IMG/VR virus record: IMGVR_UViG_3300044632_001003
Span: 124,001 to 188,000 of that record
Strand: one strand, 5' to 3'
Length of the DNA: 64,000 bases
A program made the position numbers and the translations under genes. Below, piece after piece: positions 9,752 to 63,893 of this stretch (position 1 is the first letter of the stretch; each line of letters opens with the position of its first letter). The notes beneath the pieces are model-generated. The model made no database searches and had not been told where the DNA came from. It saw only the letters and a program-made list of their open reading frames with translations.

Positions 9752-9790
9752 ATTTTAACATAAAAAAAGGAGGGAATCAACCCTCCTTTA
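9752..9790 (-). terminator. Intrinsic terminator overlapping a sigma70-type promoter
   Basis: GGAGGG-TTGATT-CCCTCC-T7; TTGATT-17 nt-TAAAAT. Confidence 0.8.
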
Positions 9791-9792
9791 CT

Positions 9793-9894
9793 TCAAGCAA
9801 CTTGTGGTTGCTTCGCCATATTCAGTTGTGCGTTATGAAGGAGTTTTTCCTTTTTTGCTTTGAGTTTGAGATAGCGAACGAAGTAAGTGTTCAT
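9793..9894 (-). CDS. 33-aa basic peptide
   Basis: MNTYFVRYLKLKAKKEKLLHNAQLNMAKQPQVA*; GGAGG RBS; ATGA coupling to the DUF4278 gene. Confidence 0.7.
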   Translation of the reverse strand: MNTYFVRYLKLKAKKEKLLHNAQLNMAKQPQVA

Positions 9895-10055: not shown

Positions 10056-10087
10056 TAGGTTTTCTCCTTAATTTTGAGGCTAAAGAG

Positions 10088-10256
10088 CGTTCCTTCAGTC
10101 GGCTTTTGCGTCTATGAATTTACAAGTTCTTGGAGATCCTTCTTTAAAGATCTGAATAAGTTCAGATCTTGCAGGCTCATCCATTTTTAGTTTTACATTA
10201 CTAATAAGTCTTTGAGCCTCAATGCAAGTCCAGAGAATTGTTTCCATAGATGAACG
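10088..10256 (-). ncRNA. Glutamine riboswitch-like aptamer 2 (Downstream-peptide/glnA family) with an ORF in its P2 loop
   Basis: CGTTCA-TCTATG...CATAGA-CGCAAAAGCCGACTGAAGGAACG; P1 CGTTC/GAACG, P2 TCTATG/CATAGA. Confidence 0.8.
10095..10247 (-). CDS. 50-aa two-cysteine protein nested in aptamer 2
   Basis: METILWTCIEAQRLISNVKLKMDEPARSELIQIFKEGSPRTCKFIDAKAD*. Confidence 0.7.
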   Translation of the reverse strand: METILWTCIEAQRLISNVKLKMDEPARSELIQIFKEGSPRTCKFIDAKAD

Positions 10257-10259
10257 ATC

Positions 10260-10510
10260 CGTTCCGAGTCGGCTTACTTCCGTCCTATTCAGTTTAGCAC
10301 TTAAGTCTTATAACGTCCTTTCGGAGTTCTGATAGCAATCGGTCTTCTTTTCTTTGGTCTACTACATCGTCGTTTTTAACGATGTCCATTAGTTCCCACG
10401 CTGCGTCGCAACTTATAGTCACTTGATTAGATTTGGCAAGTTGAGGCGTAGAAATAGAAAGAAGTGGAACCCATGCTAAAAGCAAAAGTGCTTTAGTCAT
10501 AGGATGAACG
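10260..10510 (-). ncRNA. Glutamine riboswitch-like aptamer 1 with an ORF in its P2 loop
   Basis: CGTTCA-TCCTAT...ATAGGA-CGGAAGTAAGCCGACTCGGAACG; P1 CGTTC/GAACG, P2 TCCTAT/ATAGGA. Confidence 0.72.
10294..10500 (-). CDS. 68-aa two-cysteine protein with a signal-peptide-like N-terminus, nested in aptamer 1
   Basis: MTKALLLLAWVPLLSISTP...SCDAAWEL...LKC*. Confidence 0.7.
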   Translation of the reverse strand: MTKALLLLAWVPLLSISTPQLAKSNQVTISCDAAWELMDIVKNDDVVDQRKEDRLLSELRKDVIRLKC

Positions 10511-10520
10511 TTAGGGGATT

Positions 10521-10550
10521 ATTATACCCCTATTCACACTATATAGTCAA
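10521..10550 (-). promoter_or_regulatory. sigma70-type promoter for the riboswitch unit
   Basis: TTGACT-18 nt-TATAAT; predicted start ~10514, just before aptamer 1. Confidence 0.75.
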
Positions 10551-39789: not shown

Positions 39790-39890
39790 GACCATCAGGG
39801 AAATGGTGGAGATACTATGCTCCCCGCACCCTTAGCGGGGATATGAGAGACGTAATTTATACACCCATAGGTCTCGGTTAGCGGGTGTTG
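39790..39890 (-). ncRNA. PhotoRC-II-like structured psbA leader RNA
   Basis: GAGAC/GTCTC stem crossing TATGGG/CTCATA stem; CCCCGC/GCGGGG hairpin; 5' of phage psbA. Confidence 0.65.
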
Positions 39891-39930
39891 CAAACATTAA
39901 GGATTTGTTACATTCTTTAACGTGTTGATG

Positions 39931-63498: not shown

Positions 63499-63508
63499 TG
63501 ATTCTTTT

Positions 63509-63893
63509 CAGGCTCGCCACCAATTCTTTGACTGGAAATTGGAAACCAGGCGGGAGAGAGTCCCATCCGCACCACTTGCTTTTTTATGGGAAAGCAAGAA
63601 ACCAGAAGGGGTCAAATTTGACTCCACCACTTGGTTTTAAGAAACCAAGAAAAGTTGGGTTAACTTTGATATTTCGGTGATACCAAAGAATGCTATCAGA
63701 AATAGCACATCCCAGAGTTTGAGTTTGATAGCAAAAGGAATACCGAGTAGTCCCCCAATAAACTTTATTATCAAACCATTTTTGAAATCTCCCCACAACA
63801 TGATTTGATAACCAAGTAGGAGAAGAAAGTTCCCGATATACCTCAGGATACTTGTTTTAGACATAAGGGGTTTGCTCCCGACCAGTGCTGTTA
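63509..63893 (-). ncRNA. manA/wcaG-like cyanophage structured RNA
   Basis: Three TTTC-hairpin-GTGGYG units; 5' CACTGGTCGGGAGCAAACCCC; ACTGG complementary to loop CCAGT. Exact Rfam family uncertain. Confidence 0.6.
63637..63864 (-). CDS. 75-aa membrane protein inside the structured RNA
   Basis: Hydrophobic segments throughout; stop lies in the TTGGTTT/AACCAA hairpin loop. Confidence 0.65.
   Translation of the reverse strand: MSKTSILRYIGNFLLLLGYQIMLWGDFKNGLIIKFIGGLLGIPFAIKLKLWDVLFLIAFFGITEISKLTQLFLVS

What the first reader, a model, noticed from the sequence alone, without database searches (positions are those of the whole stretch)
10088..10510. Tandem glutamine-riboswitch-like aptamers, each with a protein gene inside its P2 loop
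Seen: aptamer 1 is CGTTCA-TCCTAT[G...68-aa ORF...]ATAGGA-CGGAAGTAAGCCGACTCGGAACG. Three nt later aptamer 2 is CGTTCA-TCTATG[...50-aa ORF...]CATAGA-CGCAAAAGCCGACTGAAGGAACG. In both, the P2 stem is a perfect 6-bp long-range pairing that includes the start codon (AT of ATG in aptamer 1, the whole ATG in aptamer 2), with different compensating sequences. The second ORF runs through the aptamer's 3' core and stops at the TGA in GACTGAAG. Established: CGTTC...GAACG P1 and the GGAAGTA/CTGAAG cores mark glnA/Downstream-peptide glutamine riboswitches, whose P2 loop is normally short. Inference: the regulated gene is the aptamer's own loop. Ligand binding would close P2 over the AUG, and ribosomes translating the loop would in turn unfold the aptamer, coupling translation to the downstream DUF4278 gene. 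I do not know of a description of this architecture but cannot search.
Basis: partly seen in the sequence, partly recalled or inferred. Interest (0 to 1): 0.92.

Follow-up and report, generated by a model that had tools for sequence, protein, structure and literature searches.

The report
Glutamine riboswitches wrapped around small genes
In this marine cyanophage, two back-to-back glutamine-sensing RNA switches each have a real small protein gene inside one hairpin loop, a layout found in hundreds of related phages and, as far as I could search, not described before.

Summary
Two glutamine-riboswitch aptamers lie 3 nt apart. Each is split by an ORF (68 and 50 aa) that occupies its P2 loop.

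Outside P2, both aptamers match base for base compact phage aptamers that pass Rfam's threshold for RF01739. I analysed 124 related tandem loci. Each aptamer occurs either compact or with a 100-213-nt P2 loop, in all four combinations.

- **ORFs:** Every long loop (32 of 32 and 71 of 71) holds an intact ATG ORF from one family of small proteins with two conserved cysteines and no known function.
- **P2 pairing:** The long-range P2 arms covary and close over the start codon. At least 21 state changes map onto the ORF2 tree, and 61 of 65 sequences stay fully paired.
- **Folding:** Folding predictions place P1 and P2 exactly as in the compact form.
- **Downstream gene:** It encodes a DUF4278 protein, like the glutamine-synthetase inactivating factor IF17, behind an SD-masking helix that abuts P1.

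The architecture, the coding status and the selection on P2 are shown. Glutamine binding, start-codon occlusion and ribosome-driven unfolding are inferred. The ORFs are optional cassettes, not the switch's only target. This is a new variant of a known riboswitch class. It can be tested in the cultured phages P-SSM4, P-HM2, P-SSM2 and S-SSM7.

The parts
10521..10550 (-). Sigma-70-type promoter TTGACT-18-TATAAT. It ends 10 nt before aptamer 1, so the transcript should start a few nt before P1.
   Evidence: 11 of 12 consensus matches. The same layout is seen in S-PM2.
10505..10510 (-). Aptamer 1: P1 5' strand CGTTC plus the junction A.
   Evidence: It pairs with GAACG at 10264-10260 in the MFE fold of the isolated aptamer.
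10499..10504 (-). Aptamer 1: P2 5' arm TCCTAT, overlapping the AT of the ORF1 start codon.
   Evidence: Pair probability is 0.62-0.65 in the 485-nt transcript.
10294..10500 (-). ORF1, 68 aa. It belongs to the two-cysteine small-protein family, has a signal-peptide-like N-terminus, and fills the P2 loop of aptamer 1.
   Evidence: Median dN/dS is 0.32 and codon-position entropy runs 3>1>2. All 32 long aptamer-1 loops carry a homologue.
10283..10288 (-). Aptamer 1: P2 3' arm ATAGGA.
10260..10282 (-). Aptamer 1: 3' core and P1 3' strand, CGGAAGTAAGCCGACTCGGAACG.
   Evidence: Identical to the compact L052 aptamer, which scores 36.0 bits on RF01739 against a gathering score of 35. The half alone scores 12.3 bits.
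10257..10259 (-). GAT linker between the two aptamers.
10251..10256 (-). Aptamer 2: P1 5' strand CGTTC plus the junction A.
10243..10250 (-). Aptamer 2: P2 5' arm TCTATGGA, containing the ORF2 start codon.
   Evidence: Pair probability is 0.83-0.999.
10095..10247 (-). ORF2, 50 aa, of the two-cysteine small-protein family (invariant C8 and C42). It fills the P2 loop of aptamer 2, and its last six codons and stop are the aptamer core.
   Evidence: All 71 long aptamer-2 loops carry a homologue, and the stop falls in the core in 67 of 71. At least 501 protein clusters exist in metagenomes. The AF2 model is a helical hairpin.
10111..10118 (-). Aptamer 2: P2 3' arm TTCATAGA, inside the ORF2 coding sequence.
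10088..10110 (-). Aptamer 2: 3' core and P1 3' strand, CGCAAAAGCCGACTGAAGGAACG.
   Evidence: Identical to the compact aptamers L035 and L113, which score 35.4 and 37.8 bits on RF01739. The half alone scores 13.4 bits.
10064..10087 (-). Expression platform: CTCTTTA (10087-10081), directly abutting P1, pairs with the SD TAAGGAG (10070-10064).
   Evidence: The helix appears in every predicted fold. The same class is found in 29 of 76 distinct platforms. It resembles the inhibitory helix proposed for the gifB switch (PMC6212724).
9891..10055 (-). DUF4278 (IF17-like) gene, 54 aa, with twin YRG motifs.
   Evidence: 28 of 29 orthologues match PF14105. The start lies 31-34 nt from the end of P1 in most loci.
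9793..9894 (-). 33-aa ORF overlapping the DUF4278 stop codon (ATGA).
   Evidence: A homologous start is present in S-SRM01. Coding status was not tested.
9766..9789 (-). Intrinsic terminator that ends the roughly 750-nt unit.

Best explanation
This is the tandem glutamine riboswitch that T4-like cyanophages carry in front of an IF17-like (DUF4278) gene. In this allele both P2 hairpin loops hold an optional small-gene cassette.

Shown:
- Each aptamer is rebuilt by long-range pairing. P1 (CGUUC/GAACG) and P2 bring the 5' half, which sits just before the ORF's AUG, to the 3' core that follows the ORF. The ORF is thereby closed into a 124- or 210-nt P2 loop, and its SD-less start codon is buried in P2.
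- The nested ORFs are genuine genes of one family of small proteins with two conserved cysteines.
- Cassettes are present or absent independently at the two positions, most likely through recombination in the conserved aptamer cores.

Inferred:
- Glutamine binding locks P1 and the junction, which lowers initiation on the nested ORFs.
- As proposed for the cyanobacterial gifB switch, glutamine binding also melts the anti-SD helix abutting P1 of aptamer 2 and turns on the IF17-like gene.
- Ribosomes translating a nested ORF keep that aptamer unfolded. Ribosomes ending ORF2 stop 6 nt before the P1 3' strand. There they would strip the core, P1 and the anti-SD, which couples ORF2 translation to the downstream gene.
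For: Homology:
- S-PM2 and S-CREM1 carry compact tandem aptamers with the same cores and GAT linker, and these hit RF01739.
- Compact L052, L035 and L113 are identical to the window outside P2 and pass the gathering score.

Population:
- Among 124 loci, the distance from CGTTCA to the core is bimodal: 10-32 or 199-225 nt in aptamer 1, and 11-43 or 138-195 nt in aptamer 2. All four combinations occur.

Coding:
- 103 of 103 long loops hold an intact ORF starting 3-6 nt into the P2 arm.
- The two cysteines are invariant across 29 and 65 distinct proteins.
- Median dN/dS is 0.32 and 0.62, and codon-position entropy runs 3>1>2.
- The P-SSM4 copies fall in PHROG families.
- ORF1 and ORF2 profiles align with hhalign E = 4.7e-5.

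P2 pairing:
- For the 29 distinct arm pairs of long-loop aptamer 2, positions 3-5 use several Watson-Crick pair types, and 0 of 5000 partner shuffles reach the observed stem length. For long-loop aptamer 1 the figure is 204 of 5000.
- On a tree of ORF2 interior residues, the P2 state changes at least 21 times while 61 of 65 sequences stay fully paired at those positions.
- Cognate arms average 5.9 and 7.2 bp, against 3.0 and 2.5 bp for cross-aptamer hybrids.

Folding:
- The MFE fold of each isolated aptamer contains exactly P1 and P2, with z-scores of -3.41 and -2.94.
- Both P2 helices appear in the MFE fold of the whole 485-nt leader.
- Across homologues, P2 pair probability is 0.84 and 0.56, against 0.26 when the loop interior is shuffled.

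Sampling starting from the protein:
- The contigs read for three protein clusters all place the gene between aptamer halves.
- Profile searches over about 1 Mb of held DNA find only one free-standing copy.

Transcription unit and platform:
- Promoter and terminator bracket the unit.
- An anti-SD helix abuts P1.
- The type-1 glutamine riboswitch is an ON switch for IF17, a DUF4278 protein (PMC6212724).
Against: - No ligand-binding, structure-probing or translation data exist for any split aptamer.
- Rfam does not score the window's aptamers.
- Both cores depart from the RF01739 consensus. Aptamer 1 lacks GAA before GGAACG. Aptamer 2 has CGCAA-AAG in place of CGGAAGUA. Glutamine binding is therefore unproven even for the compact phage forms.
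- The MFE fold of the full leader pairs the P1 3' strand of aptamer 1 with the P1 5' strand of aptamer 2. Forcing both aptamers to fold costs +8.6 kcal/mol.
- P2 is predicted to form without ligand, so start-codon occlusion may not respond to glutamine.
- Covariation in aptamer 1 rests on few variants.
- The ORF2 dN/dS estimate is noisy because synonymous sites are saturated.
- The DNA-pattern sample was selected on the junction sequence.
- Only 29 of 76 distinct expression platforms show the anti-SD helix.
Confidence: 0.7

Rival explanations
1. Passenger cassette. The P2 loop simply tolerates inserts. The small genes are parked there and are translated or not regardless of the switch. The aptamers still regulate only the DUF4278 gene, and P2 pairing is kept solely for aptamer function.
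For: - Cassettes are optional and mosaic: L124, compact at both positions, is 90% identical to the window over the 220 nt after aptamer 2, including the DUF4278 gene.
- All four compact and nested combinations occur.
- P2 hairpin modules are swapped between the two aptamers.
- P2 is predicted to form without ligand.
Against: - Only one protein family is ever nested: 103 of 103 loops.
- The start codon sits 3-6 nt into P2 in every case, and no SD is present.
- The ORF2 stop falls in the core in 67 of 71 loops.
- The one free-standing copy still lies next to the switch.
These regularities suggest more than tolerance of an insert.
Confidence: 0.2
2. Disabled sensors. The inserts have killed ligand sensing. 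The conserved arms now act only as a ligand-independent operator helix that masks the start codons, and the cores persist because they are coding sequence or recombination sites.
For: - The window gives no Rfam hit.
- The aptamer 2 core doubles as the codons DAKAD-stop.
- The P1 strands have a local competitor hairpin.
Against: - The window's aptamer 1 core is non-coding yet identical to the compact form.
- The P1 5' strand CGTTCA is retained in every nested aptamer 1, although it was not part of the search pattern.
- Isolated aptamers fold into P1 plus P2.
Confidence: 0.07
3. Circularly permuted aptamer. The contiguous, highly conserved stretch made of the aptamer 1 3' half, the linker and the aptamer 2 5' half is the real unit. 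P1 would be closed by the GAU loop, and P2 would form from the outer arms.
For: - That 48-nt stretch is the best-conserved part in BLAST searches, at 93-96% identity across many phages.
- The GAACG-GAU-CGUUC hairpin appears in the MFE fold of the full leader.
Against: - Hybrid arms pair over only 2.2-3.1 bp, against 5.1-7.8 bp for cognate arms, in all four classes.
- Compact relatives have ordinary, non-permuted aptamers.
Confidence: 0.02
4. The long loops are non-coding structured RNA domains and the ORFs are accidental.
For: Native loop interiors favour P2 closure more than shuffled interiors do.
Against: - 103 of 103 frames are open despite protein identity as low as 11%.
- The cysteines are invariant, and substitutions follow a codon-position pattern.
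- dN/dS is below 1.
- No conserved interior RNA structure was found.
Confidence: 0.01

Closest known systems
Glutamine riboswitch, type 1 (glnA RNA, Rfam RF01739), including its tandem doublets
   Same: - P1 CGUUC/GAACG, with P2 immediately after CGUUCA.
- 3' core of the type ACGGAAGUA...GAAGGAACG.
- Two aptamers in tandem.
- A DUF4278/IF17-like gene downstream, behind an anti-SD helix next to P1.
- Compact phage alleles pass the Rfam threshold.
- 157 glutamine doublets are on record (PMC9481103).
   Different: - The P2 loop is 124 and 210 nt and encodes a protein, whereas the consensus loop is about 4 nt.
- The start codon lies in P2, and the ORF2 stop lies in the core.
- Each core departs from the consensus in a different place.
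Glutamine-II riboswitch (Downstream-peptide motif, RF01704) and Yfr6
   Same: - Found in marine picocyanobacteria and their phages.
- Associated with short ORFs and DUF4278 genes.
- The CGCA-type core resembles the phage aptamers: S-PM2 aptamer 1 scores 24.6 bits and L059 aptamer 2 scores 33.2 bits.
- Yfr6 was first taken for a non-coding RNA that contains an ORF (PMC2864571).
   Different: There the peptide gene lies downstream of the aptamer. Here the gene lies inside it. The pseudoknot fold is also different.
Short translated uORF within the Mycobacterium tuberculosis metE B12 riboswitch aptamer (PMC11260477)
   Same: Translation inside an aptamer, with a demonstrated effect on the downstream gene.
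   Different: That uORF is about 16 codons long, overlaps aptamer nucleotides and is not a conserved protein family. It does not split the aptamer with a long loop and is not an optional cassette.
ORFs in peripheral loops of group I and II introns (general knowledge)
   Same: A protein gene housed in a loop of a structured RNA that must still fold around it, with start signals often buried in the RNA structure.
   Different: Those are self-splicing mobile introns that encode their own homing or maturase proteins. Here the RNA is a metabolite sensor, and the protein shows no sign of a mobility function.

Membership tests
Glutamine riboswitch type 1 (RF01739) | P1 helix CGUUC/GAACG enclosing the aptamer | tested here: met
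   Both strands are present for both aptamers. They pair in the MFE fold of each isolated aptamer. They do not pair in the MFE fold of the full leader.
Glutamine riboswitch type 1 (RF01739) | P2 helix between CGUUCA and the CGG/CAAG core, supported by covariation | tested here: met
   P2 is 6 and 8 bp in the window. Among long-loop homologues, 0 of 5000 partner shuffles reach the observed stem length for aptamer 2 and 204 of 5000 for aptamer 1. At least 21 state changes occur with pairing kept.
Glutamine riboswitch type 1 (RF01739) | Conserved core ACGGAAGUA ... GAAGGAACG | tested here: inconclusive
   Aptamer 1 has CGGAAGUA but has C-GGAACG in place of GAAGGAACG. Aptamer 2 has CGCAA-AAG together with GAAGGAACG. 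Compact alleles with the same cores pass the gathering score.
Glutamine riboswitch type 1 (RF01739) | Covariance-model score at or above Rfam's gathering score (35 bits) | tested here: not met
   The window gives no hit, and the halves alone score 13.4 and 12.3 bits. The model cannot span the inserts. Compact relatives identical to the window outside P2 score 36.0, 35.4 and 37.8 bits.
Glutamine riboswitch type 1 (RF01739) | Short P2 hairpin loop in a compact aptamer of roughly 50-60 nt | tested here: not met
   The loops are 210 and 124 nt and coding. This is the point of difference.
Glutamine riboswitch type 1 (RF01739) | Selective binding of L-glutamine | not testable with these tools
   Needs in-line probing or ITC.
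Glutamine riboswitch type 1 (RF01739) | Association with a DUF4278/IF17-type gene downstream | tested here: met
   and PMC6212724.
Tandem (doublet) riboswitch | Two aptamers of one class in a single leader | tested here: met
   A 3-nt linker separates them, and the junction recurs in at least 120 contigs.
DUF4278 (PF14105), the downstream protein | Pfam score at or above the curated cut-off (25.3 bits) | tested here: inconclusive
   The window protein scores 19.6 bits, E = 0.0012. 28 of 29 orthologues match at E <= 0.01, the best at 3.1e-7. YRG and a second YRG are invariant or nearly so.
Riboswitch with a translated ORF inside the aptamer (as in M. tuberculosis metE) | The ORF inside the aptamer is translated and alters downstream expression | not testable with these tools
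   Coding selection is shown. Translation and its effect are not.

The most novel reading that the evidence does not exclude
A metabolite-sensing aptamer assembled around a translated gene works as a two-output switch gated by ribosomes. Glutamine closes the aptamer over the nested gene's start codon, silencing the two-cysteine proteins, and at the same time opens the SD of the IF17-like gene. Ribosome traffic through the loop resets the sensor or bypasses it. This would give the phage reciprocal, nitrogen-dependent control of two gene sets from one RNA.
Probability: 0.35. Interest if true: 0.9.

Novelty: new variant of a known kind. Interest (0 to 1): 0.82.

Why it matters
Riboswitch aptamers are regarded as compact, non-coding sensor domains. 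Here a validated class is split by whole protein genes yet kept foldable by selection across more than 100 natural variants. That makes the competition between ribosomes and aptamer folding part of the design.

It would be a natural case of one aptamer controlling a gene inside it and a gene after it, possibly in opposite directions. It also explains why standard covariance-model scans miss these switches, so phage riboswitch counts are underestimates.

The finding ties an unstudied, very abundant family of small marine phage proteins to glutamine and glutamine-synthetase control during infection. Cultured phage-host pairs that carry the nested form make it directly testable: P-HM2 on MED4, P-SSM4 on NATL2A, P-SSM2 and S-SSM7.

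Tried and rejected
- **Rfam scans of the window.** The gathering-threshold and permissive scans found nothing at the site.
- **Search for ORF relatives in genomes.** The search for related loci with the ORF2 alignment failed because it had no conserved stretch to search with.
- **tblastn.** The 50-aa ORF was too short to be sensitive, giving 3 records.
- **Genome scan for the aptamer 2 core.** It found only 5 contigs in MAGs or single-cell assemblies, at least one of which is phage, so no host copies turned up.
- **RNAalifold on 31 aptamer 2 sequences of the window's clade.** It recovered P1 but no conserved structure inside the ORF.
- **Tool-based pair counting.** The MAFFT alignment of all long aptamer 2 sequences put gaps in the 5' arm. 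I counted pairs in junction register with my own script instead of the count of structure pairs, and I did not type a 256-character structure string.
- **Function of the nested proteins.** Pfam, PHROGs, NCBIfam, PDB sequence profiles, and AF2 plus Foldseek gave nothing beyond 'unknown'. Cluster look-ups gave no informative names.
- **Papers not held.** Ames & Breaker 2011 and Ren et al. 2015 were unavailable.
- **Other GGAACG sites.** Sites at 1555 and 1645 are unrelated to this feature.
- **Rejected readings.** The permuted-aptamer reading and the non-coding reading of the loops were both rejected.
Full report
**Context.** The window comes from a T4-like cyanophage. It carries a wcaG RNA and a PhotoRC-II RNA, and its relatives at this locus are Prochlorococcus and Synechococcus myoviruses. 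The feature lies on the minus strand.

**Observation.** On the minus strand, aptamer 1 reads CGTTCA (10510-10505), TCCTAT (10504-10499), a 68-aa ORF (10500-10294), ATAGGA (10288-10283) and CGGAAGTAAGCCGACTCGGAACG (10282-10260). A GAT linker follows. Aptamer 2 reads CGTTCA (10256-10251), TCTATGGA (10250-10243), a 50-aa ORF (10247-10095), TTCATAGA (10118-10111) and CGCAAAAGCCGACTGAAGGAACG (10110-10088). ORF2 stops at the TGA of GACTGAAGG. Each half-plus-core pattern is unique in the window and absent from 100 shuffles.

**Identity of the RNA.**
- Rfam finds nothing here, because its 53-position model cannot span the inserts.
- Phages S-PM2 and S-CREM1 have two ordinary compact aptamers at the same locus, with the same cores and the same GAT linker. 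These hit RF01739 at 33 bits. S-CREM1's authors annotated theirs as glnA.
- Among 20 metagenomic relatives, seven single compact aptamers pass the gathering score, and an eighth hit spans both aptamers of one locus.
- The window's aptamer 1 is identical at every non-P2 position to L052 (36.0 bits). Its aptamer 2 is identical to L035 and L113 (35.4 and 37.8 bits).
- Searched alone, each 3' half of the window hits only RF01739 among 4227 families, as a 5'-truncated match of 13.4 and 12.3 bits.

- In 124 parsed loci, the distance from CGTTCA to the core is bimodal. It is 10-32 or 199-225 nt in aptamer 1 (88 compact, 32 long) and 11-43 or 138-195 nt in aptamer 2 (47 compact, 71 long).
- The combinations are compact/long 48, compact/compact 35, long/long 20 and long/compact 11.
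- Locus L124, compact at both positions, is 90% identical to the window over the 220 nt after aptamer 2, which include the DUF4278 gene. P2 hairpin modules are also exchanged between the two aptamers. Presence or absence is therefore mosaic, as expected from recombination in the conserved cores.
- Cultured phages with nested ORFs are P-HM2 and P-SSM4 (both aptamers) and P-SSM2, S-SSM7, DSL-LC02 and the freshwater phage S-SRM01 (aptamer 2 only).

**The inserts are genes.**
- All 32 long aptamer 1 loops and all 71 long aptamer 2 loops hold an intact ATG ORF beginning 3-6 nt into the P2 5' arm. In 67 of 71, ORF2 ends in the core.
- The 29 and 65 distinct proteins are very diverged, down to 11% identity to the window's ORF2. 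They keep two invariant cysteines and a hydrophobic N-terminus.
- Median dN/dS is 0.32 and 0.62. Column entropy is highest at codon position 3 and lowest at position 2.
- ORF1 and ORF2 profiles align across both cysteines (hhalign E = 4.7e-5, probability 68%), so they are probably paralogues.
- The family has at least 501 clusters in public proteins. It has no Pfam domain and no informative name. The P-SSM4 copies fall in PHROGs 6471 and 504, both of unknown function.
- An AF2 model of ORF2 is a two-helix hairpin (pLDDT 74) with no fold match.
- Sampling that starts from the protein gives the same picture. The contigs read for three clusters (carried in 445, 305 and 3 collection blocks) place the gene between aptamer halves, including variants with different cores.
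- Profile searches over about 1 Mb of held DNA find one exception, a free-standing ORF1 homologue in L077. It sits immediately upstream of the promoter of a compact switch.
- No other protein family was found in a loop.

**Long-range P2 is under selection.**
- Among the 29 distinct arm pairs of long-loop aptamer 2, positions 1-3 are always paired. Positions 4 and 5 are paired in 27 and 25 of the 29 distinct arm pairs, using C-G, U-A, A-U and U-G. The mean contiguous stem is 5.5 bp against 3.8 for shuffled partners (0 of 5000 shuffles reach it). This is the same quality as the compact hairpins.
- Aptamer 1 has fewer variants (204 of 5000).
- The 5' arm lies in the untranslated nucleotides and the first codons. 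The 3' arm encodes the residue before the C-terminal DAKAD. Their co-variation has no coding explanation.
- On a tree built from interior residues only, the P2 state changes at least 21 times while 61 of 65 sequences stay fully paired at positions 3-5. The tree is short and recombination is likely, so this is a rough count.
- Cognate arms pair far better than cross-aptamer arms (5.9 and 7.2 bp against 3.0 and 2.5 bp). This rejects a permuted aptamer built from the adjacent halves.

**Folding.**
- Each isolated aptamer folds, without constraints, into exactly P1 plus P2 around a structured loop, with z-scores of -3.41 and -2.94.
- In the 485-nt leader, both P2 helices are in the MFE fold (pair probability 0.63-0.65 and 0.83-0.999). 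The P1 strands instead form the local GAACG-GAU-CGUUC hairpin, and forcing both aptamers costs +8.6 kcal/mol.
- Across homologues, P2 probability is 0.56 and 0.84, against 0.26 with shuffled interiors. No conserved structure inside the ORF was found.

**Transcription unit and output.**
- A TTGACT-18-TATAAT promoter ends 10 nt before aptamer 1, and a terminator lies at 9789-9766.
- The nested ORFs have no SD. The downstream gene has AAGGAG.
- That gene is a DUF4278 protein with twin YRG motifs, placed 31-34 nt after P1 in most loci.
- DUF4278 marks IF17, the glutamine-synthetase inactivating factor. Its type-1 glutamine riboswitch in Synechocystis is an ON switch, thought to melt an RBS-masking helix attached to P1 (PMC6212724).
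- The window has such a helix: CUCUUUA directly after GGAACG pairs with UAAGGAG.

**Mechanism.**
- *Shown:* a split but foldable tandem aptamer, nested coding cassettes, start codons inside selected P2 helices, and the ORF2 stop inside the core.
- *Inferred:* the glutamine-bound state hinders initiation on the nested ORFs and opens the SD of the IF17-like gene. Translating ribosomes prevent aptamer folding. Ribosomes terminating ORF2, 6 nt before the P1 3' strand, would strip P1 and the anti-SD.
- *Caveats:* because P2 is predicted to form without ligand, the glutamine-sensitive step is probably P1 and the junction. Both cores deviate from the consensus, and no binding data exist for phage aptamers.

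**Novelty.** Glutamine riboswitches in cyanophages and their tandem arrangement are known (PMC2864571, PMC9964418, PMC9481103). I found no description of protein genes inside their loops. The nearest precedent is a roughly 16-codon uORF within the M. tuberculosis metE B12 aptamer (PMC11260477). Two key papers were not available to read, so prior mention cannot be fully excluded.

Noticed in passing
window 63506-63606 (-) and 39807-39900 (-): wcaG RNA (100.7 bits) and PhotoRC-II RNA (79.5 bits). Both are cyanophage cis-regulatory RNAs, and they mark the window as a cyanomyovirus.
   Followed up: no
window 9793-9894 (-): A 33-aa ORF overlaps the DUF4278 stop codon by ATGA. The same MNTYF start follows the DUF4278 gene in S-SRM01 (L002, about 2023 onward). 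It may be a fourth small gene of the unit.
   Followed up: partly
L077, positions 1866-2072 of its reverse complement: The only free-standing member of the ORF1 family found. It lies just upstream of the promoter of a compact aptamer 1. This hints at how a neighbouring gene could come to be enclosed by the aptamer, or released from it.
   Followed up: partly
L015, L018, L048, L063, L083, L108, L118, L121 (aptamer 1): The P2 hairpin TTCGCTATT...AATAGCGAA, typical of compact aptamer 2, sits in aptamer 1 in these loci. P2 modules therefore move between the two aptamers.
   Followed up: no
L147 731-897 (P-SSM2, AY939844.2): The nested ORF2 homologue of P-SSM2 has no annotated feature in the GenBank record. 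Its P2 extends to 12 bp.
   Followed up: partly
L002 1688-1864 (S-SRM01): The aptamer 2 core reads GACGGAAGG and so has no stop codon. ORF2 runs on to a TAA inside the anti-SD segment. A stop in the core is usual but not obligatory.
   Followed up: no
window 10260-10282 and 10088-10110 (-): The two cores depart from the RF01739 consensus in complementary ways. Aptamer 1 keeps GGAAGUA but lacks GAA before GGAACG. Aptamer 2 keeps GAAGGAACG but has CGCAA-AAG. The difference is conserved across phages, and its meaning is unknown.
   Followed up: no
window 10147-10170 (-): A perfect 10-bp hairpin, AAGATCTGAA-CTTA-TTCAGATCTT, lies inside ORF2 and appears in every predicted fold. It is not conserved outside the closest relatives.
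   Followed up: partly
L003 1019-1204 (P-SSM4): A manA RNA (184 bits) lies about 90 nt upstream of the nested tandem switch in P-SSM4.
   Followed up: no
L009, L051, L054, L079, L090, L104, L136, L142-L145 (ORF1): In one ORF1 subfamily the reading frame continues into the aptamer 1 core and ends ...GRK-stop at the TAA of CGCAAGTAAGCC. In that subfamily both nested genes can terminate inside their aptamer cores.
   Followed up: partly
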